Shown: one piece after another, positions 222-62,503 of the stretch
How the letters are laid out: each line of letters begins with the position of its first letter
Position numbering within the stretch: the first letter of the stretch is position 1
NCBI RefSeq assembly: GCF_006345805.1
Contig: NC_043019.1
Location: 32,549,360 to 32,613,359, forward strand
Reading direction: 5' to 3'
Length of the DNA: 64,000 bases
Source of the DNA: Octopus sinensis
Taxonomy: Eukaryota
The notes under the pieces: model-generated
What the model was told of the DNA's origin: nothing
The model's database searches: none
What the model saw: the letters and a program-made list of their open reading frames with translations, nothing else
Position numbers and translations under genes: made by a program

Positions 222-875
<654 letters not shown>

Positions 876-4374: not shown

Positions 4375-4792
4375 GGTGCAGGAGTGGCTCTGTGGTAAGT
4401 AGCTTGCTTACCAGCCACATGGTTCCGGGTTCAGTCCCACTGCATGGCATCTTGGGCAAGTGTCTTCTACTATAGCCCCGGGCCGACCAATGCCTTGTGA
4501 GTGGATTTGGTAGATGAAAACTGAAAGAAGCCTGTCGTATATATGTATATATATATGTATGTTTGTGTGTATGTGTTTGTGTGTCTGTGTTTGTCCCCCT
4601 AGCATTGCTTGACAACCGATGCTGGTGTGTTTACGTCCCCGTAACATAGCAGTTCGGCAAAAGAGACCGATAGAATAAGTACTAGGCTTACAAAGAATAA
4701 GTCCCGGGGTCGATTTGCTCGACTAAAGGCGGTGCTCCAGCATGGCTGCAGTCAAGTGACTGAAACAAGTAAAAGAGTAAAGAGTAAAGAGT
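4375..4792 (+). mobile_element. SINE family A, full length
   Basis: Complete head, body and tail as in 439-875. Confidence 0.85.
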
Positions 4793-5184: not shown

Positions 5185-5416
5185 TATATATATATTACTC
5201 CTTTACTTGTTTCAGTTATTTGACTGCAGCCATGCTGGAGCACTGCCTTTAATCGAGCAAATCGACCCCAAGACCTATTCTTTGTAAGCCTAGTACTTAT
5301 TCTATCGGTGTCTTTTGCTGCTGAACTGGCAGGTTACGGGGGACATAAACACACCAGTATCGGTTGTCAAGCGATGGTGGGGGGACAAACACAGACACAC
5401 AAACATATACACACAC

Positions 5417-5491
<75 letters not shown>

Positions 5492-5655
5492 TATGACGGG
5501 CTTCTTTCAGTTTCCATCGACCAAATTCACTCACAAAGCTTTGGTCGGCCTGAGGCTATAGTAGAAGACACTTGCCCAAGGTGCCACGCTGTGGGACTGA
5601 ACCTGGAACCATGTGGTTGGTAAGCAAGCTACTTACCGCACAGCCACTCCTATGT
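5185..5655 (-). mobile_element. SINE family A, full length, inverted relative to 4375-4792
   Basis: Reverse complement of the family A sequence. Confidence 0.85.
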
Positions 5656-7250: not shown

Positions 7251-8709
7251 AAGGAAATGCAAAAAAGGAAAGCTAGAGTGCCTTGCACAATATATTTCAG
7301 GATACTCAGTGAAGTGTTTGGTGTTAGGAAGGGCATCTGGGCGTAGAAACCATGCTAAATCAGACTGGAGTCTGGTGCAGCTCCCCAGCTTGCAAGCTCT
7401 GGTCAAACCGTCCAACTCATGCCAGCATGGACAACGGACGATACATGAGGATAATGATGTTGATTTCAGAGGTGTACTTGTCATGTAAATGATTTGAGCT
7501 GAGACCATGGGTTGAAAGCAAAATGATTGCAGTATGGAAGACAACACATGTTAATCATTCAGAAACGCATATCTTTTATCCCCTTTTCTTCCTTCTTTTA
7601 CTTGTTTCAGTCATTTGACTTTGGCCATGCTGGTGCATCACCTTGAAGGGTTTTAGTCAAACAAATCGATGCCAGGTCCAACAAAAGCCTTTGTGAGTCG
7701 ATTTGGTAGATGGAAGCTGAATAAAGCTCATTGTATATCGATCTCTTTTGCCGAACCGCTATGTTACGGGGGTGTAAACACGCCAACATTGGTTGTCAAG
7801 CGACGTTGGGGTGGACAAACACACACACACATATATATACATACTTATACATATATACGATGGGCTTCTTTCAGTTTCCGTCTACCAAATCTACTCACAA
7901 GACTTTGGTCGGCCCGAGGCTATAGTAGAAGACACTTGCCCAAGGTGCCATGCAATGGGACTGAACCTGGAACCATGTGGTTGCCACACAGCCACTCCTG
8001 CACCATGTATGTATGTATGTATATATAGATATACATATACATATGTATATGCATATGTGTGTGTGTGTCTATGTATGTGCATGTCTTTGTGCCTATGTTT
8101 GTGACCCATCACTTCTTGACAACTGATGTTAGTTTGTTTACATCCCTGTAACTTGGCAGTTCAACAAAAGAGATCAATAGAATAAGTACCAGGTTATTTA
8201 AAAAAAAAAAGAATTAGGTTCAGTTTGTTCAATTAAACCCTTCAAAGTGGTGCCCCAGCATGGCCAAAGCCCAATAACTAACACAAGTAGTAAAGGACAA
8301 AAGAGGAATCTCATAGACAACCATTTCCTTAGTTCCCTTAGTGTTTATTAGTAGTGGTAGCCATGAGTGGAGCATAAGTGATTAGTGATGTCAGCACCTA
8401 TTGCATCTGTACGGATGGAGAAAACAGCATTTTTCAATGTCAGAAAGAGGAAAATATTCAGTGAATGTTCATATGTCATATTCTACTTTTCCGCAACATT
8501 AAAGTTTCGACTTAGTAATTTCAGGAAAGGAAAGAATTGGAGCCGCTTTTTGGTCTGTCATTTTTGAGGGATTATTTCCTAATGCATGTGTGTCTGTGTG
8601 TCCGTGTGTGCGTGCATGTATATGTACGTATATGTACGTATATATATGTATGTGTATATGAAAGAGAGAGAAAGATTGAGAAAAATGTTTATGTACTTTA
8701 TTATTATTG

Positions 8710-42400: not shown

Positions 42401-42779
42401 AAGATAACTCTTTACTCTCTCTTTTACTTGTTTCAGTCATTTGACTGTGGCCATGCTGGAGCACCGCCTTTAGTCGAGCAAATCGACCCCAGGACTTATT
42501 CTTTATAAGGTTAGTACTTATTCTATTGGTCTCTTTTGCCGAACCGCTAAGTTACGGGGGACGTAAACTCACCAGCATCAGTTGTCAAGTGAAGTTGGGG
42601 GACAAACACAAACATACACATACACATACATATATACATATATACGACGGGCTTCTTTCTGTTTCCGTCAACCGAATCCACTCACAAGGCTTTGGTCGGC
42701 CCGAGGCTATAGTAGAAGACACTTGCCCAAGGTGCCACACAGTGGGAATGAACCTGGAAACATATGGTTGGTAAGCAAC

Positions 42780-45764: not shown

Positions 45765-46440
45765 TGTATGTATATGTATATACGGAGAGAGAGAGAGAAA
45801 GAGATGGAGAGAGACATGTGCTGTAAGGGCAACATCAGAGGTAAAGCTAGTGGGAGGAAGTTTATTATTTTCTATTTTCTTCCTCTAATTTTATATTTTT
45901 TGAAAATCTTTTTATTAATTTATCTATTTTTTAAAGGGGGGAGGTGGGTAGAATTATCTATTTTGGCTTTTGCCCCAGTGTGGAATGTGTTTGAAGTTAA
46001 GTGGGATCACATGAGTCAAGCAATATGTTTCGACTGATAATGCTAAAAGAGGTGAAAAGTTAAATAAAAATAATAATAATTTAAATAAAAACAAAATAAT
46101 ATGTAAAAAAAAGAAAAAAAAAACACAAACAGTACTAAAACCAATAGTAAAATTAGGTGCTAGAATATTTTAGGTTAGACTATTTCAATAATTTTTTTTT
46201 GCCTTTTTTTTTGTTTTTTTTCTTGTTTTGTTTTACTTTACATAATTTTGGTATCGTTTTTCTTAGTATGTTACGGGAGTTTTACAGTCAAATCAAAATA
46301 CAAGTTAAGTTAAATAGCACTTAAAATGGATTGGATGGTGCAAAATGCTGGAGTTTTTATGTCACTTTTTTTGGCTCCTGACACAAACGTTTGATTTAAA
46401 TCAAATAAATAATGGGAATAATAATAATAATAATATAATA

Positions 46441-46474
<34 letters not shown>

Positions 46475-46757
46475 CACTTTGATAGCATGCACTGCTCTCT
46501 CAATCAATAATAATAATAATAATAATAATAATGATGATGATGATGAGATGATGATGATGGCAATAATGAAATTAAAATAAAATATAAATTTACAGCTATA
46601 TCGGAATACTGGTTTTTTGAAAGTTAGCTTTGTATACACAAACACATAATTATGTACATGTGATGGTGTTTATTTGTTTACCCATAAATGTGTGTGTGTA
46701 TATATACACATGTATATATTATATGTATATATAATTGTATATACATATATATATATA

Positions 46758-46965
46758 GTTAATCCAAACATGAAAACACAAAGAGAAAACACAACAACGC
46801 GAGGACATGGAACAAATATAGTGTTATTGGACGCTCAGGAAAGAAGGAAAGAAGGAGGGTTTAACGTTTCGAGTGGAGCTCTTCATCAGAAACATAGGAA
46901 AAGGAAAGATCCAGAGAAGGGAAGACAGAGGAAAAAAAATCGCCAACGGTACACATGCAGTCACG
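46758..46965 (-). mobile_element. Penelope-type terminal-repeat fragment inserted in (TA)n, carrying a minimal hammerhead
   Basis: Non-coding, flanked by (TA)n on both sides, contains the HHR at 46859-46893. Confidence 0.65.
46859..46893 (-). ncRNA. Minimal type I hammerhead ribozyme
   Basis: GUUU CUGAUGA A GAG CUCCA CUC GAAA CGUU AAAC. Stem I GUUU/AAAC, intact core, stem II GAG/CUC, palindromic ACGU stem III, GUU cleavage triplet. Confidence 0.8.
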
Positions 46966-47094
46966 TATCTATATATATACATGTATATATAACTAAACAT
47001 ATATATGTACATAGATATATATACAAATGTATATATAATTATATATACAATATATATATGTATGTATATATGTGTGAGTGTATGTGTGAGTGTT

Positions 47095-47135
<41 letters not shown>

Positions 47136-47488
47136 GTATTTATTATATATATACATGTATATATTACATGTATATAATTATACATACATGTACATATATA
47201 TATATATATATATAATTAATTAATAAGGGTGAGAGAATTAGATACTACTAATTTAATAGTATTCTATTCAACACCAAGTGGCCTAGTGCTTCGAGAAACC
47301 TGGATTATTATAATATTTTATAATATATTATACTATTTTTACAAAATAAATATAAGAGAGTGGTCACTATATGCTCACTCTAGCACCAGTTAATCCAAAA
47401 GGTTTCAACCACAAAAATACATGTTCCCATGAAAGTCAGTACGATTGTTAGCTCACACGCGGACAGGGCAAATAAAATAACAAAAATA

Positions 47489-47587
47489 CAGATTATTTTG
47501 GGACAATTGTTTCGCTATAATGAATTATGTAATTTTACTTACTTACAAAAAAATCCACTTGTAGCTCGTCAGCCAAAACTACATCTG
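47489..47587 (-). ncRNA. Type I hammerhead ribozyme, copy A (complete)
   Basis: CAGAU-GUA-GUUUUGG CUGACGA GCUA[44-nt extended hairpin]UAGC GAAA C AAUU G U C| CCAAAAU-A-AUCUG. All core bases are canonical; C17 is at 47502. Confidence 0.88.
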
Positions 47588-48040
47588 GATGAAATCCACT
47601 CATCACACTCCACAGCCATTTTACCATAACGATAAATACGCGTGTGGTTCAATTGATTACATCCGACGTTATATTCAAAATGCCCCAACTAACAGCGCGC
47701 CAAACTTTCACGGAAAACAAAGACTGCATTTAGAAATAAATGTAGCATAATTATAATTAATTAATAAGGGTGAGAGAATTAGATACTAATTTAATAGTAT
47801 ATCTATTCAACACCAAGTGGCCTAGTGCTCCGAGAAACCTGGATTATTATAATATTTTATAATATATTATAATATTTTTACAAAATAAATATAGAGAGTG
47901 GTCACTATATGGCTCACTCTAGCACCAGTTAATCCAAAAGGTTTCAACAACCACAAAAATACATGTTTCCCATGAAAGTCAGTACGATTGTTAGCTCACA
48001 CACTCACACGGACAGGGCAAATAAAAAATAACAAAAATAC

Positions 48041-48135
48041 GATTATTTTGGGACAATTGTTTCGCTATTAATGAATTAAATGTAATTTTACTTACAAAAA
48101 AAATCCACTTGTAGCTCGTCAGCCAAAACTATCTG
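48041..48135 (-). ncRNA. Type I hammerhead ribozyme, copy B (complete)
   Basis: Same core and stems as copy A; C17 is at 48052, 550 nt from copy A. Confidence 0.85.
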
Positions 48136-48459
48136 GATGAAATCCACGACGAGCTACAAGTGGATTTTTTTGTAAGTAATAAAATTACATTTAATTCATT
48201 AATAGCAAAACAATTGTCCCAAAATAATCTGTATTTTTGTTATTTTTTATTTGCCCTGTCCGTGTGAGCTAACAATCGTACTGACTTTCATGGGAAACAT
48301 GTATTTTTGTGGTTGAAACCTTTTGGATTAACTGGTGCTAGAGTGAGCCATATAGTGACCACTCTCTTATATTTATTTTATATATATATATATATATAAA
48401 TACATGTGTATATATATCTGTGTGTGTGTGTATATATATATAATTATATATATATAATA

Positions 48460-49765
48460 TAACGGGAAGCTTTATGAAAATAAACAAAAAACGAAGGCAA
48501 GTGGAGTACAAACAAACAATTGTATTAGTATGGCACTCAGGAATATAAATAAAACAAGTCTTTTACGTTTCGAGCCTACGCTCTTCAACAGAAAGATACA
48601 CAGAAAAGAAACACGGAGAGAAACAAGGAGAGAAAAAAAATGCATGCAGAAGCTAGCGAGTCAACATGGCGATCTGATTCCGGCCAGAAGTCAGAGATCA
48701 GACGTGAGAGCGAATGTAAGGGAGATAACAGAGTCAAATGACTTCGTGCCAACATAAGGGTGCATGTGTGTATGAGAGAGTATGTAGTGCGTATGAAAGG
48801 TCTGGACATGTGTATGTATGTATGATGTGATGTGTAATGTCGTATGGTGTAGTGTAGAGAGAGGAGAGGAGGGGGGAGGAGGGAGGAGAGATGGGGGAGG
48901 ATAGAGGGGGAAGAGGGGGGAGAAGGAAGAGGAGAAGAGGAGGGAGGAGGGAGAAGAGGAAAGGTGGAGAGTGAGGAGTGTGAGATGAGGGGGAGGGGGA
49001 GAGGGGAGAGAAGGAAAGAAGGAGGGGGTGAGGGTGAGATGAGATGTGATGAGAGTGGAGGGTGGGAGGGGGGAGAGAATGAAAGAGGAGAAGAGGAGGG
49101 AGGAGGGAGAGGGAGGGGAGAAAGAAGGAGAGTAGAAGAGGAGGGGGATGGGAAAGGAGGGGAGAGGAGGGGGGAGGATAGGGAGAGGGGAGAGAGGGGG
49201 GAAAGAATGAGAGTGAGGGAGCAGAGAGAAAGAGAGAAGGGGAAGAGGGAAGAAGAAAGAGGAAAGAAGAGGAGGGAAGACGGGAAGAGGAGGGAAGACG
49301 GGAAGAGGAGGGAAAGAGAGTAGGGGTGAAAAGATGAAGGACTGAAGAGAAGTAGGAGTCGGGGGGAGGTTAGATGAGGAGGGGGGAGAGTTGAGACCAA
49401 ATGGTGTAAAAGAGCTAAGAGAGAAGATTAATCCCTGTTCACGGCGCAAACGGGAATCCGGATGACCTCTGTGCAAGGACAAACCGAACACAGACAGGTG
49501 TTGCAAGGAGTGACCAGTGGAGTGGAAATGGCGTGAGACCAGTGTGTCATTGGCAAGGCAGATGTCACGGAGGTGTTCCGCGAACCGGTCAGCCAAGCGG
49601 CGTCCCGTTTGTCCGATGTACAGGGAATGGCAGAGAGAGTAAGAGATGCAATAGATGATATTGCTGGAGGTGCAGGTGAAGGAGTTGATGATGGGTGCCA
49701 GTGAGGAGGGTGGTGTTGGAGAGGTAATGGCAAGTGCAGCAACGTGGGCGGGAGCGTGTGTATAG
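48460..49765 (-). mobile_element. Penelope-like element (Neptune-type) 3' fragment: Cys-rich linker, GIY-YIG endonuclease, low-complexity tract, terminal repeat with hammerhead
   Basis: Minus strand reads RPRCCTCHYL../FTCTSSNIIYCISYSLCHSLYIGQTGRRLADRFAEHLRDI..VSRHFHSTGHS..RREQGLIFSL. The 3' end lies in (TA)n. Confidence 0.85.
48559..48596 (-). ncRNA. Minimal hammerhead-like motif with variant core CUGUUGA
   Basis: UCUUU CUGUUGA A GAGC GUAG GCUC GAAA CGUA AAAGA. All three stems pair; A6 is replaced by U. Confidence 0.65.
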
Positions 49766-56010: not shown

Positions 56011-57120
56011 TATATGTGCAGTGTATGAGAGAGAAATGAAAAATAATCATAAATTTGAAAACAAAGAAACTTTCTAAAAAATGCTTTTAAAGTAAAAAAG
56101 CCGAAAAAAAAATTGTAAATAAAGAATTCTAAATTTATTTCACTTAATGACTTTGTAATTATTAATCCTTATTAGCATTTTGGTAAACAGAGACCGCAAA
56201 GCCTTCTATCTGTTTTCTCCTAATAGTTCAGGACCAAAAGCCGCAGTCCCCCCCCCACCCCATCTCATTCCCATGGTGTATAATTGTTTTAGATTACAAT
56301 GCTCTCTCTTCTCCCCAGCACAGGATGCTGGTCCATCCCTGAGTTGATTTCCCAGCTATTGCAGGAATTATTTACAGTCAAGTGGAAGCAGAGCAACAGG
56401 AAGCAAAGTTTTTCACTCAAGAATACAATGCATTGCCTGATCTGGGAGTTGAAACCACAATCTTGCGATTGTGAGTGCATCGCCCTTACCAATGGGTCAT
56501 GTTCCTTCACAAGACCGAAAAGCACCACATGTAAAGTACAAGTACTAGGGTCTAGAGAGATTTATACAGTAGTAACATGATAAAGTGGTGGTATGTAATA
56601 CGATAAAGCGGTGCGTCCTATGGCTAAATAGCAGTAGTATTCTTCCCTTTCATGGGACTATCACATTAAGTTGACAACATACCACTACTAGGGTCTATAT
56701 CAGTAGTTCTCAATCAGGGTCCATATGACCCTTAAGCGATCCATATGACCCTTAAGGGATCCATATAAGATTTTGTTGTTAAAATTTATGTGCAGTAAAC
56801 TAGTTATACTCTTTTACTTGTTTCAGTTGTGGGACTAAACCATGTTGGAACTAAACCCAGAAGCAAGATTCTTACCACACAGCCACTCCTGCGCCTATTG
56901 TACTCTTTTACTCTTTTACTTGTTTCAGTCTTTTGACTGCGGCCATGCTGGAGCACCGCCTTTAATCAAGCAACTCGACCCCGGGACTTATTCTTTTGTA
57001 AGCCCAGTACTTATTCTATCGGTCTCTTTTACCGAACCGCTAAATAACGGGGACATAAACACACCAGCATCGGTTGTCAAGCAATGCTAGGGGGACAAAC
57101 ACAGACACACAAACACACAT
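54815..57120. repeat. ~1.15-kb tandem duplication (copy 1 about 54815-55960, copy 2 about 55965-57120)
   Basis: Both copies start (GATA)n-GTATATGTGCA..AATCATAAATTTGAAAAC and differ mostly by small indels. Breakpoints lie in (TA)n. Confidence 0.9.
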
Positions 57121-57777
57121 GCATATATATATATATATACATATATACGACAGGCTTCTTTCAGTTTCCGTCTACCAAATCCACTCACAAGGCTTTGGTC
57201 GGCCCGAGGCTATAGTAGAAGACACTTGCCCAAGGTGCCACGCAGTGGGACTGAACCCGGAACCATGTGGTTGGTAAACAAGCTACTTACCACACAGCCA
57301 CTCCTGCGCCTATGTATTGTATATGTTTTTAAATTATTTTCATACTTTGTATCTACTTATTTTATAATAAATGCAAAACAACACCACAGAGGAATCGACG
57401 TAAGCTTAAATAACAAACCACAATAGGCGAACCATGATGTGGCAAGGGACTACTGTATTATTTCATTACTTTACAACATTTTCCCTCTGAATTTATTCTC
57501 CCATGACTATATATATGAGGTGCATTCCAGCAATTTTGAGACGAGAGAAGCAGTTAGAACTGTCCTAGATTATTGTATTTTTAGTTTAACACTTTCAACT
57601 TGGAGGATTTCCATGAGGTATCCATGAGCTGGCTGGAGCACTGAAACAGATGCACTGAAATCGAAGGATCCTGCTTTGAAGGAAATTAGAGTTTTTTGTA
57701 CTTTGAAATTGATAAATGTCTCTCCTGAAAATGTCTCAAAACTTTTAGAATATACCTTATATCTAATTAATTATCTC

Positions 57778-60689: not shown

Positions 60690-61030
60690 TATAGTGGCTG
60701 TGTGGTAAGTAGCTTGCTTACGAACCACATGGTTCCGGGTTCAGTCCCACTGCATGGCACCTTGGACAAGTGTCTTCTACCATAGCCTCAGGCCGACCAA
60801 AGCTTTGTGGGTGGATTTGGTAGACGGAAACTGATAGAAGCCCGTCGTATATATGTATGTGTATATGTTTGTGTGTCTGTGTTTGTCCCCCCACATCGCT
60901 TGACAACTGATGCTGGTGTGTTCAGCTAAGAATAAGTCCTGGGGTCGATTTGCTCGACTAAAAAGGTGGTGCTCCAGCATGGCCACAGTCAAATGACTGA
61001 AACAAATAACAGAGTAAAAGAGTAAAAGAG
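60690..61030 (+). mobile_element. SINE family A with an internal deletion, preceded by a second head (about 60510-60670)
   Basis: Family A head and tail. Confidence 0.75.
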
Positions 61031-61566: not shown

Positions 61567-61762
61567 ACGGGAAGCTTTATGAAAATAAACAAAAGACGAA
61601 GGCAGGTGGAATACAAACAAACAATTGTATTAGTATGGTGCTCAGGAATATAAATAAAACAAGTCTTTTACGTTTCGAGCCTATGCTCTTCAACAGAAAG
61701 ATACACAGAAAAGAAACAAGGAGAGAAAAAAAATGCGTGCAGAAGCTAGCGAATCAACATGA
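61567..61762 (-). mobile_element. Solo Penelope terminal repeat, same family as 48460-48670, with CUGUUGA hammerhead (61664-61701)
   Basis: Near-identical to 48460-48670, with the same TATAACGGGAAGC boundary in (TA)n. Confidence 0.8.
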
Positions 61763-61899: not shown

Positions 61900-62085
61900 A
61901 TCATTCGCCATGCTGGACCACTGAAATCTACAAGCATTTTTTCATTCTCTTTTTGCTTATTTTCTCTTATTCCTTTTTGTTGAAGAGCATAGGCTCGAAA
62001 CATAAAAGACTTTTTCATTTCCAGAGTGTCAAACTAATACACTTGCTGTTGTTCACACCTGTCTTCATTTGGTTTTCTATAATTT
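61900..62085 (+). mobile_element. Diverged Penelope terminal repeat in the opposite orientation, with a decayed hammerhead (61973-62008)
   Basis: CUUU UUGUUGA A GAGC AUAG GCUC GAAA CAUA AAAG. Ends in (TA)n. Confidence 0.65.
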
Positions 62086-62503
62086 CAAATATATATATAT
62101 ATATATTATATATATATATATTATATACATATATATATATATAAGTATGTATGTATATATATATACATATATATATAAATTGTAGAAACTCTGCCAGATC
62201 AGATTGGAGCCTGCTGCAGCCATCTGGCTCACCAGTCCCCAGTCAAACCATCCAACCCGTGCCAGCATGGAAAGCAGACGTTAAACGATGATGATGATGA
62301 TGATATATATATATATATATTTGTGTGTATGATATATATATGTACATAAGTATGTATGAGTGTGTCTGTGTTTCTGTTAGGTAGATAAATAGATATAGAT
62401 AGGTATTCATACATGTGGACATATAAATACACATAAATTATATAAATATATATTTATATGTATACACACACACACACACACATATTCCAGCATGCACACC
62501 CAC

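What the first reader, a model, noticed from the sequence alone, without database searches (positions are those of the whole stretch)
47211..48147. Tandem ~545-nt non-coding unit with complete type I hammerhead ribozymes: candidate cephalopod retrozyme/circRNA system
Seen in sequence: two tandem copies of an AT-rich, ORF-less unit in (TA)n. On the minus strand each has a canonical core: CUGACGA, stem II GCUA/UAGC closing a 44-nt insert that itself folds (AA-UGGAUU/AAUUCA-UU and UGUAA/UUACA), GAAA, and a GUC cleavage site. Stem III is the palindrome ACAAUUGU. Stem I is GUUUUGG/CCAAAAU, extended in copy A past a 3x1 internal loop by CAGAU/AUCUG. The cleavage sites (47502, 48052) are 550 nt apart. 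Established knowledge: metazoan non-LTR retrozymes and Penelope terminal repeats are tandem HHR-bearing units whose transcripts self-cleave to monomers that circularise; palindromic stem III loops allow dimeric hammerheads; a bulged stem I supports tertiary contacts in type I HHRs such as the Schistosoma one. Inference: read-through transcription would release a 550-nt monomer, longer than most animal retrozymes I know of, and the unit could be mobilised in trans by Penelope-like elements. It is unrelated in sequence to the adjacent Neptune terminal repeat. I do not know of a description in octopus but cannot check that.
Basis: partly seen in the sequence, partly recalled or inferred. Interest (0 to 1): 0.92.

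Follow-up and report, generated by a model that had tools for sequence, protein, structure and literature searches.

The report
Hammerhead-ribozyme repeat inserted Penelope-style
A non-coding, AT-rich repeat of about 545 bases carries a complete self-cleaving hammerhead ribozyme, and its arrangement (one inverted fragment, one partial copy, one long copy, all inside a TA microsatellite) is that of Penelope-like retroelement insertions, so it is a fairly ordinary new example of a known class of ribozyme-bearing mobile elements.

Summary
On the minus strand, two complete type I hammerhead (HHR) motifs sit 550 nt apart, with C17 at 47502 and 48052. They lie in 1.73 head-to-tail copies of a ~545-nt ORF-less unit of 25-38% GC, inside a (TA)n tract. 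Every core residue is canonical. A full descriptor finds only these two sites, against 1 hit in 300 shuffles. Rfam Hammerhead_1 aligns end to end at 30.0 and 27.9 bits, below the 34-bit threshold, with a ~40-nt hairpin inserted in loop 2.

Inverted fragment, partial tandem copy and longest copy inside (TA)n together match the published Penelope-like element (PLE) insertion architecture. Two PLE fragments lie in the same tract.

Best reading: the insertion product of a non-autonomous, PLE-mobilised HHR element of the retrozyme type. The weak, palindromic helix III suggests cleavage as a dimer.

At this locus the inverted copy is predicted to lock the upstream ribozyme into a ~235-bp hairpin. 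Release of the 550-nt monomer is therefore doubtful unless transcription starts inside the element.

Cleavage, circular RNA, genomic copy number and the host species could not be tested. I rate it a new member of a known kind, of moderate interest.

The parts
46966..47214 (.). TA-rich microsatellite, (TA)n with TG/CA runs. It forms the 3' flank of the element in minus-strand orientation.
   Evidence: TRF period 2, 124 copies; sequence read.
47206..47599 (-). Copy A: the 3' ~394 nt of the unit (unit positions 148-541), containing HHR-A. Its end merges into (TA)n at ...TTATTAATTAATTATA.
   Evidence: blastn; alignment A1; 98.4% identity to B at aligned bases, with 13 indel events.
47600..47746 (-). 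Segment X: the 5' 147 nt of the longest copy, present once, with somewhat higher GC. In the predicted monomer fold it pairs with the GAGCUAACAAUCGUACUGACUUUCAUGGGAAACA region.
   Evidence: Only one copy found by blastn; no similarity to PLE endonuclease proteins; fold.
47747..48147 (-). Copy B: a 5'-truncated direct copy (unit positions 148-541) placed upstream of X+A, giving the partial tandem. It contains HHR-B.
47489..47587 (-). HHR-A, a type I hammerhead. Helix I is 7 bp, then a 3x1 internal loop, then 5 bp. Core is CUGACGA. Helix II is a 4-bp GCUA/UAGC stem closing a 44-nt hairpin insert. GAA follows, then helix III ACAAUUGU, then C17 at 47502. Predicted cleavage lies between 47502 and 47501.
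   Evidence: Rfam RF00163 at 47496-47578, 27.9 bits.
48041..48133 (-). HHR-B, the same ribozyme. Helix I is 7 bp, then a 1x1 loop, then 3 bp. C17 is at 48052, so predicted cleavage lies between 48052 and 48051.
   Evidence: Rfam RF00163 at 48046-48128, 30.0 bits.
47502..48051 (-). The predicted 550-nt monomer RNA that double self-cleavage would release. It would be the substrate for circularisation.
   Evidence: Spacing of the cleavage sites; MFE -141.5 kcal/mol, z = -4.65 against shuffles. Its release is inferred, not shown.
48148..48379 (+). Copy C: an inverted copy truncated at both ends (unit positions 177 to ~410). It starts at G5 of the core, so it lacks C3, U4 and the 5' strand of helix I. 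G12 is mutated to A at 48207 (GCAAAAC), so the ribozyme remnant is dead. Its outer end merges into (TA)n at ...TTATATTTATTTT.
   Evidence: Inverted repeats I1-I4, I7, I14, I18; blastn; alignment; G12A located; hairpin with B.
48368..48461 (.). TA-rich microsatellite on the other side of the complex.
   Evidence: TRF.
48462..49760 (-). PLE-1, a neighbour and not part of the unit. It is a 5'-truncated Penelope-like element with a GIY-YIG endonuclease tail (49393-49698), a low-complexity 3' UTR, and a minimal-HHR-like motif at 48596-48559 with U at core position 6. Its 3' end abuts the (TA)n.
   Evidence: Translation; Pfam PF01541 E 0.0099, below cut-off; homologues down to E 2e-26, several carrying PF01541; alignment.
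46758..46965 (-). PLE-2, a neighbour: a ~208-nt PLE 3'-end fragment between two TA tracts. It has a minimal HHR with an intact core, CUGAUGA-A-GAG/CUC-GAAACGUU, at 46889-46855.
   Evidence: The architecture matches the min-HHR description in PMC4209133. The lower boundary was estimated.

Best explanation
The locus is the integration product of a short (~545-550 nt), non-coding, AT-rich retroelement that carries a canonical type I hammerhead ribozyme. That makes it an animal 'non-LTR retrozyme'-type element. It was most likely copied into a (TA)n microsatellite by the reverse transcriptase and GIY-YIG endonuclease of a Penelope-like element.

Shown:
- The ribozyme motif is complete in copies A and B.
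- The unit has no detectable coding capacity.
- The three copies are arranged as inverted truncated copy, 5'-truncated direct copy, then longest copy, inside (TA)n next to two PLE fragments.

Inferred mechanism:
1. The endonuclease nicks the TA repeat.
2. cDNA synthesis is primed by TA microhomology on a multimeric or circular RNA template and runs for 1.73 units. Both direct copies span the cleavage site, so the template was not a cleaved linear monomer.
3. A second priming or a template switch adds the inverted fragment.

At a productive locus of the family, a minus-strand transcript with two or more units would bring two ribozymes together through the 8-nt palindrome ACAAUUGU, forming a double hammerhead. 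It would cut after GUC and release a 550-nt RNA with 5'-OH and 2',3'-cyclic phosphate ends. A host tRNA ligase would circularise this RNA, and the circle would serve again as the retrotransposition template.

This particular locus is probably a poor producer. The inverted copy C sequesters HHR-B in any transcript that begins upstream of 48148.
For: - Ribozyme: canonical core and three helices, found at only two sites against 0.003 expected per window. Full-length Rfam Hammerhead_1 alignments at 30.0 and 27.9 bits. Helices I and II and the insert hairpin appear in the unconstrained MFE, with z = -2.5 and -3.95.
- HHR type: helix lengths of 6 Watson-Crick bp + GU (I), 4 bp (II), and 2 bp + palindromic tetraloop (III) match the 'canonical metazoan type I' description. 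They do not match the minimal PLE type (PMC4209133). PMC7229834 assigns canonical type I HHRs to non-autonomous retrozymes.
- Dimer: with the cores kept unpaired, two copies fold into a double hammerhead with an 8-bp helix III at -45.6 kcal/mol. This equals the sum of the monomer MFEs.
- Architecture: matches the PLE insertion structure in PMC8557442, i.e. a partial tandem plus an adjacent inverted 5'-truncated copy with (TA)n bias. A second PLE family in the window shows the same inverted/direct arrangement beside (TA)n.
- Single event: substitution identity among A, B and C is about equal at 97.8-99.1%, consistent with one event.
- Non-coding, low GC.
- Structured monomer: z = -4.65.
Against: - Only one locus and 2.7 copies are available, so there is no covariation, no copy number and no consensus ends.
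- No related sequence was found in the viral or metagenome collections, or through a spurious-ORF protein search.
- Both HHRs score below the Rfam gathering threshold.
- In the nearest-neighbour model the cleavage-competent fold is 4.6 kcal/mol less stable than a fold pairing core GACGA with UUGUC.
- The effect of the 44-nt insert on the loop 1-loop 2 tertiary contacts is unknown.
- The unit is longer than the published 170-400 nt range.
- Copy C is truncated at its 3' side too, which the textbook PLE scheme does not predict.
- HHR-B is predicted to be locked in a -362.7 kcal/mol hairpin.
- Non-autonomy is unproven. X+A could itself be a 5'-truncated piece of something longer.
Confidence: 0.6

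Rival explanations
1. The three copies are 5'-truncated insertions of a longer, autonomous Penelope-like element. Its 3' region (pseudo-LTR) would happen to carry a canonical rather than a minimal hammerhead. The ~545-nt 'unit' would then be just the longest truncation product, not a non-autonomous element.
For: PLE insertions are typically heavily 5'-truncated and arranged as partial tandems with an inverted truncated copy (PMC8557442). This is exactly the arrangement seen here. PLE-1 next door has a ~930-nt non-coding 3' region after its ORF, so a 541-nt non-coding tail is not implausible. HHRs of PLEs lie in the pseudo-LTR.
Against: X shows no trace of GIY-YIG or other coding sequence and has stops in all minus-strand frames (read). 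Metazoan PLEs are reported to carry minimal HHRs: no helix III, long helix II, short helix I, and an extra unpaired base. Both neighbouring PLE fragments do so. This HHR is instead the canonical type that the literature assigns to retrozymes (PMC4209133, PMC7229834). The window holds no RT ORF related to the unit.
Confidence: 0.17
2. The locus acts as a hairpin-RNA source. Whatever its origin, the relevant product today would be a ~235-bp double-stranded RNA formed by copy C and copy B, processed into small RNAs (siRNA/piRNA-type silencing of the family). It would not be a ribozyme-released circle.
For: The near-perfect fold-back has MFE -362.7 kcal/mol and z = -45. Rfam miRNA-precursor models give sub-threshold hits across it. 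In a transcript that includes C, HHR-B keeps 0 of 7 helix I pairs and 0 of 4 helix II pairs, whereas HHR-A keeps all of them.
Against: No expression or small-RNA data are available. All miRNA hits are far below gathering scores (54.7 against 140, 52.6 against 94). They are explained by the inverted repeat alone. This reading is compatible with the best explanation rather than an alternative to the element's origin.
Confidence: 0.1
3. This is an ordinary local tandem and inverted duplication (replication slippage or unequal exchange in a microsatellite-rich region) of a sequence that contains a relic hammerhead. No retrotransposition by PLE machinery occurred, and the ribozyme is not active today.
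For: The region is full of simple repeats. The copies differ mainly by small indels, with 13 indel events against 6 substitutions. Only one locus is known.
Against: The specific combination matches the PLE insertion signature and recurs for another PLE family in the same window. That combination is an inverted truncated copy, a truncated direct copy and the longest copy, all ending in TA tracts, with two PLE fragments in the same tract and orientation. All 13 conserved core positions are intact in both direct copies, even though peripheral indels have accumulated.
Confidence: 0.07
4. This is an assembly artefact. The tandem and/or fold-back arrangement would come from mis-assembly of a repeat, for example a palindromic chimeric long read. 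Only a single HHR unit would then exist.
For: PLE-type tandem/inverted structures are known to trouble assemblies (PMC8557442). The indel-dominated differences, often in homopolymers, resemble long-read consensus noise.
Against: The fold-back is asymmetric. 29 nt of copy B form the loop and are absent from copy C. The arms also differ by substitutions, including G12A. Copies A and B differ by multi-base indels such as GTGTGA and GTT, and X is present once. None of this fits a simple duplication artefact.
Confidence: 0.04
5. A chance hammerhead-like motif in AT-rich repeat DNA.
For: The motif is simple, and consensus matches do occur by chance in large genomes (PMC3088659). At my descriptor's rate of 0.0033 per 64 kb, a genome of a few Gb would hold on the order of a hundred chance hits.
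Against: The motif sits in a repeated unit with PLE-type architecture beside PLE fragments. The helix lengths match the canonical metazoan design. The Rfam model aligns end to end.
Confidence: 0.02

Closest known systems
Metazoan non-LTR retrozymes (Cervera and de la Pena 2020, PMC7229834), e.g. Mytilus galloprovincialis 350-390-bp repeats, Acropora 220-240-bp repeats, axolotl 330/350-bp repeats
   Same: A canonical type I HHR in each unit. Head-to-tail units of a few hundred bp, low GC and no ORF. A predicted highly self-paired monomer RNA. Co-occurrence with autonomous-type PLE sequences. A weak helix III with a palindromic loop, implying dimeric cleavage as in the amphibian elements.
   Different: The unit of ~545-550 nt exceeds the 170-400 nt reported. 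Only 1.73 units are present, plus an inverted fragment, rather than a multimer array. Loop 2 is replaced by an internal loop plus a ~40-nt hairpin. Expression, circularity and copy number are unknown here.
Penelope-like element insertions with pseudo-LTRs (Evgen'ev and Arkhipova 2005; Craig et al. 2021, PMC8557442)
   Same: A partial tandem, with a truncated copy in front of a longer copy. An adjacent inverted 5'-truncated copy. Insertion in a (TA)n microsatellite, so no target-site duplication can be discerned. An HHR lies in the repeated part.
   Different: No RT/GIY-YIG ORF. The HHR is canonical (helix III present, 4-bp helix II, 6-7-bp helix I) rather than the minimal PLE type. The inverted copy also lacks the 3' ~130 nt of the unit.
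Minimal HHRs of metazoan PLEs (Cervera and de la Pena 2014, PMC4209133)
   Same: Type I topology and palindromic helix III sequences that call for dimerisation. Examples of this type sit 150-500 nt away on either side, at 46889-46855 and 48596-48559.
   Different: Those have no closed helix III, a short helix I (4-5 bp) and an extra unpaired base after A9. The unit's HHR has none of these features and shows no sequence similarity to them.
Schistosoma mansoni Sm-alpha SINE-like HHR element, newt satellite 2 and Dolichopoda pDo500 satellite (own knowledge; cited in PMC4209133, PMC6155905 and PMC3088659)
   Same: Repetitive non-coding units that each encode a type I HHR with a GUC site. The residues flanking the loop-2 hairpin here (CAA...UAA) resemble the loop (CA..AAUA) of the Rfam Hammerhead_1 consensus shown. 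From memory, that consensus is the Schistosoma type. From memory, pDo500 has a ~500-bp unit, so a 550-nt unit is not without precedent.
   Different: No sequence relationship was tested or expected. Those HHRs have a closed short loop 2, and their activity has been demonstrated, which is not the case here.

Membership tests
Type I hammerhead ribozyme (Rfam RF00163 Hammerhead_1) | Conserved core C3 U4 G5 A6 N7 G8 A9 / G12 A13 A14 / A15.1-U16.1 / H17 | tested here: met
   CUGACGA ... GAA A...U C is intact in copies A and B. Copy C lacks C3 and U4 and has G12A.
Type I hammerhead ribozyme (Rfam RF00163 Hammerhead_1) | Three helices around the core, with helix I open and helices II and III closed | tested here: met
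   Helix I 7 bp, helix II 4 bp plus extension, helix III 2 bp plus an AAUU loop (an 8-bp palindrome for a dimer). See the descriptor and the folds.
Type I hammerhead ribozyme (Rfam RF00163 Hammerhead_1) | Covariance-model score at or above the curated gathering score (34 bits) | tested here: not met
   30.0 bits (B) and 27.9 bits (A), with full model 1-45 aligned. No hit at gathering in the whole window. My inference is that the shortfall comes from the ~40-nt insertion in loop 2 and the misaligned helix II in the printed alignment.
Type I hammerhead ribozyme (Rfam RF00163 Hammerhead_1) | Loop 1-loop 2 tertiary contacts and actual self-cleavage | not testable with these tools
   The internal loops lie at the canonical distances from the core, 6-7 bp in helix I and 4 bp in helix II. 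Contacts and catalysis need an experiment.
Metazoan non-LTR retrozyme | Canonical (not minimal) type I HHR in each repeat unit | tested here: met
   compared with the definitions in PMC4209133 and PMC7229834.
Metazoan non-LTR retrozyme | [quoted passage not shown] | tested here: inconclusive
   1.73 units with 539-550-bp spacing. The arrangement is head-to-tail, but the dimer is incomplete, the unit is longer than the stated range, and an inverted fragment is attached.
Metazoan non-LTR retrozyme | No protein-coding capacity; low GC | tested here: met
   No ORF of 80 aa or more with a start codon. The only stop-to-stop frames of 60 aa or more (81 and 61 aa, + strand) have no homologues. No PLE endonuclease similarity. 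GC 0.25-0.38.
Metazoan non-LTR retrozyme | Many dispersed genomic copies; expression as linear and circular RNA | not testable with these tools
   No other copy in the 64-kb window, nor in the viral or metagenome collections. No host genome or transcriptome was available.
Penelope-like element (autonomous) | Single ORF with a PLE reverse transcriptase and a GIY-YIG endonuclease | tested here: not met
   No such ORF in or contiguous with the unit. The GIY-YIG tail at 49393-49698 belongs to a different, unrelated-in-sequence element.
Penelope-like element (insertion signature) | Partial tandem (pseudo-LTR) with an adjacent inverted 5'-truncated copy, and microsatellite target bias | tested here: met
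   Inverted C, then B, then X+A, within (TA)n, compared with PMC8557442.
microRNA precursor families (MIR4208, MIR2863, mir-186; sub-threshold Rfam hits) | Score at or above gathering; conserved mature miRNA | tested here: not met
   54.7 against 140, 52.6 against 94, and 40 against 70 bits. The hits simply follow the C/B inverted repeat.

The most novel reading that the evidence does not exclude
Its canonical type I hammerhead would tolerate a ~40-nt hairpin grafted into loop 2 while keeping the flanking loop residues. The integration scar (inverted fragment plus 1.73 seamless units, both outer ends in A/T-only stretches of the unit, inside a TA microsatellite shared with PLE fragments) would be direct structural evidence for two things. 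First, that PLE machinery mobilises canonical-HHR retrozymes. Second, that it does so by microhomology-primed, twin-primed reverse transcription of a circular or multimeric RNA.
Probability: 0.3. Interest if true: 0.55.

Novelty: new member of a known kind. Interest (0 to 1): 0.38.

Why it matters
Ribozyme-bearing repeats of animals (retrozymes) are thought to be copied by Penelope-like elements. That link rests mostly on co-occurrence and, recently, on sequence relatedness of pseudo-LTRs in vertebrates (bioRxiv 10.64898/2026.07.22.740005).

This locus pairs a canonical-HHR, non-coding unit with the peculiar PLE insertion scar, beside PLE fragments in the same TA tract. It is a small piece of independent structural support for that link.

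It also shows that covariance-model annotation at default thresholds misses HHRs with large loop insertions. Counts such as '235 Hammerhead_1' in a squid genome may therefore be underestimates.

If the ribozyme is active, the hairpin-in-loop-2 design would be a useful natural test of how much helix II can be extended without losing the tertiary contacts. None of this changes the general picture of the field.

Tried and rejected
- Rfam at gathering threshold on the whole window gave no hits. Rfam at E<=10 on 1.6 kb gave no hammerhead hit, only miRNA-like hits caused by the inverted repeat. The HHR hits appeared only when ~110-nt stretches were searched.
- Rfam does not recognise the neighbouring minimal HHR at 46889-46855.
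- Collection scans for the HHR with its insert found nothing in viral contigs or metagenome contigs. A scan for a conserved 25-mer of the unit found nothing in metagenome contigs.
- I searched the 81-aa stop-to-stop frame opposite the HHR, hoping to catch spurious ORF calls on other copies. It gave no hits.
- I fetched contigs encoding homologues of the neighbouring PLE endonuclease (L001, L002). They contain no copy of the unit, and the sample codes did not tell me the organism.
- tRNA/SINE-head check: no tRNA-like gene in 46000-49000.
- A constrained cofold with enforced intermolecular pairs crashed. I replaced it with a core-unpaired constraint.
- A literature search combining retrozyme with cephalopod terms was badly designed and uninformative. 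Narrower searches found no description of cephalopod retrozymes. They found only an Rfam count of Hammerhead_1 hits in the giant squid.
- I considered the miRNA-precursor and chance-motif readings and rejected both (see the rival explanations).
Full report
**1. What is in the sequence**

I read 48600->46800 on the minus strand.

I wrote a stricter descriptor. It requires the core, helix I of at least 5 bp, helix II of at least 3 bp, and helix III of at least 2 bp with A15.1-U16.1 and a non-G at position 17. It returns exactly these two sites in 64 kb on both strands. Across 300 dinucleotide-preserving shuffles it returned one hit.

In copy A the helix I extension is 5 bp past a 3x1 loop; in copy B it is 3 bp past a 1x1 loop. 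The z-scores are -2.5 and -3.95.

**2. Rfam**

At the gathering threshold the whole window gives nothing. A 1.6-kb search at E<=10 shows no hammerhead either.

When only ~110 nt are searched, Hammerhead_1 (RF00163) aligns over its entire model (1-45) to both copies:
- copy B, 48046-48128: 30.0 bits, E 3.9e-6
- copy A, 47496-47578: 27.9 bits, E 1.9e-5

Both are below the curated 34 bits. The printed alignments show about 40 inserted bases inside loop 2 and a poorly aligned helix II. I take that to be the reason for the shortfall, which is an inference.

So the motif passes the structural definition of a type I hammerhead but narrowly fails the database threshold.

**3. Which kind of hammerhead**

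Cervera and de la Pena (PMC4209133) describe the canonical metazoan type I HHR as follows: helix I of 6 bp, helix II of 4 bp, and helix III of 1-2 bp capped by a 2-4-nt palindromic loop. Such a weak helix III hinders monomeric cleavage and favours a dimeric ribozyme in tandem transcripts.

The minimal HHRs of animal PLEs differ. They lack helix III, have a shorter helix I and a longer helix II, and carry an unpaired base after A9.

The unit's HHR fits the canonical type: 6 Watson-Crick pairs plus a G-U in helix I, 4 bp in helix II, and 2 bp plus AAUU in helix III.

The two motifs flanking the locus are of the minimal type, complete with the extra A. They lie at 46889-46855 and 48596-48559.

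What is unusual here is loop 2. It is replaced by an internal loop, CAA on the 5' side and UAA or UA on the 3' side, plus a ~40-nt hairpin. The flanking residues resemble the CA..AAUA loop of the Rfam consensus shown.

**4. Energetics**

In the nearest-neighbour model the minimum-energy fold pairs core residues GACGA with UUGUC. A fold with the core free is 4.6 kcal/mol less stable in both copies.

With the cores held unpaired, two copies fold into a textbook double hammerhead:
- an 8-bp intermolecular ACAAUUGU helix III
- swapped helices I
- intact helices II
- energy -45.6 kcal/mol, equal to the sum of the two monomer minima and 3.8 kcal/mol above the unconstrained dimer

This is compatible with dimer-dependent cleavage, as known for newt and axolotl elements (PMC6155905, PMC7229834). 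It is not proof of activity.

**5.

blastn of the longest copy against the window finds only three pieces, all at this locus:
- A with its unique 5' segment X: 47746-47215, minus strand
- B: 48147-47756, minus strand, unit positions 148-532
- C: 48148-48398, plus strand, unit positions 177-423, with real homology ending near 48379

Copy C starts at G5 of the core. It therefore lacks C3, U4 and the 5' strand of helix I. It also has G12 changed to A at 48207, so its ribozyme remnant is dead.

Read on the minus strand, the locus runs: (TA)n, inverted C, B, X, A, (TA)n. That is 1.73 head-to-tail units plus an inverted fragment, not two full tandem units.

At aligned bases the three copies are 97.8-99.1% identical to one another. 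They differ by many small indels; A against B has 6 substitutions and 13 indel events. The roughly equal pairwise identity fits a single origin.

**6. What the arrangement means**

Craig et al. (PMC8557442) describe PLE insertions as follows:
- highly 5'-truncated
- often organised in partial tandems, so that a longer copy is preceded by a truncated one (the pseudo-LTR)
- often with an inverted 5'-truncated copy immediately adjacent
- with a strong bias for microsatellites, (TA)n among them, which hides target-site duplications

That is the arrangement found here.

The same TA tract (46699-48461) also holds two PLE fragments in the same orientation.
- PLE-1 (49760->48462) ends with a GIY-YIG endonuclease tail. 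Pfam PF01541 scores E 0.0099, below cut-off. Nine homologues score down to E 2e-26, four of them carrying PF01541.
- Longer homologues of PLE-1 show a C-x4-C-xx-C motif before GIY-YIG.
- PLE-2 is a ~208-nt 3' fragment.
- A second pair of PLE-1-family termini, at 61761->61567 (minus) and 61945-62087 (plus) beside (TA)n, shows the inverted/direct pattern again.

The unit itself shares no detectable sequence with these elements. It has no similarity to their endonuclease proteins.

**7. Mechanism I consider most likely**

Shown: a complete HHR in a non-coding, low-GC unit (GC 0.25-0.38), arranged like a PLE insertion.

Inferred: a PLE endonuclease and reverse transcriptase copied an RNA of this family into the TA repeat.
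- Both direct copies span the cleavage site. The template was therefore an uncleaved multimer or a circle, not a cleaved linear monomer.
- Both outer ends of the complex lie in A/T-only stretches of the unit...TTATTAATTAATTATA for A and ...TTATATTTATTTT for C.
- This suggests priming by TA microhomology, with a second priming event or a template switch producing the inverted piece. That part is speculation based on one locus.

For the family in general I expect the published retrozyme cycle (PMC7229834, PMC7761336): transcription of two or more units, dimeric HHR cleavage after GUC, release of a 550-nt RNA, ligation by a host tRNA ligase, and reverse transcription of the circle.

The predicted 550-nt RNA is more structured than shuffled controls, at -141.5 kcal/mol and z = -4.65. 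This agrees with the 'highly self-paired' retrozyme RNAs in the literature.

**8. A caveat specific to this locus**

Copy C is the reverse complement of copy B from G5 onwards.
- A minus-strand RNA covering 48400->47890 folds into a nearly perfect ~235-bp hairpin, at -362.7 kcal/mol and z = -45.
- In a transcript from 48400 to 47480, HHR-B keeps none of its helix I or II pairs, while HHR-A keeps all of them.

So read-through from upstream would give at most one cut, at 47502, and no 550-nt monomer. Release would need a start site between 48147 and about 48133. The hairpin might instead feed small-RNA pathways.

I therefore regard this locus as a daughter insertion rather than a likely source copy.

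**9. Rivals**

The main rival is that X+A, B and C are all truncated 3' ends of a longer autonomous PLE (0.17). The HHR type and the lack of any coding trace in X argue against it, but only other genomic copies can settle the question.

The remaining readings are:
- hairpin-RNA locus (0.10, not exclusive of the best explanation)
- local duplication of a relic (0.07)
- assembly artefact (0.04); the asymmetric fold-back with a 29-nt loop and substitutions between the arms argue against it
- chance motif (0.02)

**10. What could not be done**

- No host genome or transcriptome was available.
- Scans of the viral and metagenome collections, and a protein-level trick, found no further copies. There is therefore no covariation test, no copy number and no consensus.
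- The host organism could not be identified. The fetched homologue contigs carry only sample codes.

**11. Novelty and score**

Several things are already established. HHR-bearing tandem units in animals have been known since 1987 and were defined as retrozymes in 2020. HHRs in PLE pseudo-LTRs have been known since 2014. A 2026 preprint argues that animal retrozymes derive from PLE pseudo-LTRs. Rfam-based annotation already lists 235 Hammerhead_1 hits in the giant squid (PMC6962438).

I found no paper describing cephalopod retrozymes, but that would be a gap in description, not a new kind of system.

The distinctive points here are the hairpin in loop 2, the 550-nt unit, and the clean PLE-type scar around a canonical-HHR element.

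Verdict: a new member of a known kind, interest 0.38.

Noticed in passing
window 48462-49760 (minus strand): A 5'-truncated Penelope-like element (PLE-1). It has a GIY-YIG endonuclease tail at 49393-49698, a purine/pyrimidine-skewed low-complexity 3' UTR (48857-49314), and a 3' end abutting (TA)n. Longer homologues carry a C-x4-C-xx-C linker before GIY-YIG, which is the Neptune/Nematis type.
   Followed up: partly
window 48596-48559 (-), ~61716-61680 (-), ~61990-62030 (+): All three copies of the PLE-1 family's minimal hammerhead-like motif read (C/U)UGUUGA, so each has U at core position 6 instead of the essential A. The plus-strand copy also appears to have U at position 3. The change is shared by the copies, so it is a family trait. 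It means either an inactive relic or a non-canonical core.
   Followed up: no
window 46758-46965 (minus strand): A ~208-nt PLE 3'-end fragment (PLE-2) between two TA tracts. It has a minimal HHR with an intact core at 46889-46855: CUGAUGA, an extra A, a GAG/CUC helix II, then GAAACGUU. It appears distantly related to PLE-1 by eye, but not by blastn.
   Followed up: partly
window 61567-61761 (-) and 61945-62087 (+), with (TA)n at 62090-62170: A second PLE-type complex: a direct and an inverted truncated 3' end of the PLE-1 family, next to a TA microsatellite. It shows the same insertion style as the finding.
   Followed up: partly
window 47206-48379: The three copies of the unit differ mostly by short indels in homopolymers and by short duplications (GTGTGA, GTT). 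A against B has 13 indel events and 6 substitutions. The cause could be reverse-transcriptase or replication slippage, or long-read consensus noise.
   Followed up: partly
window 47600-47746 versus about 47420-47470 (minus strand): Segment X contains an imperfect reverse complement of an internal part of the unit, e.g. UGUUUUCCGUGAAAG pairing with CUUUCAUGGGAAACA. This gives the predicted 550-nt RNA a long-range, rod-like stem.
   Followed up: partly
window 475-843, 4411-4722, 5294-5620, 7778-8101, 42445-42771, 57059-57274, 60721-60921: A dispersed short repeat on both strands, recognisable because one frame always translates to ...GLNPEPCGW or close variants. It is probably a SINE-like family of the host.
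   Followed up: no
window 48043-48226: Sub-threshold Rfam hits to plant and animal miRNA-precursor models (MIR4208, MIR2863, mir-186). They are produced purely by the C/B inverted repeat, which illustrates how such repeats create false miRNA annotations.
   Followed up: yes
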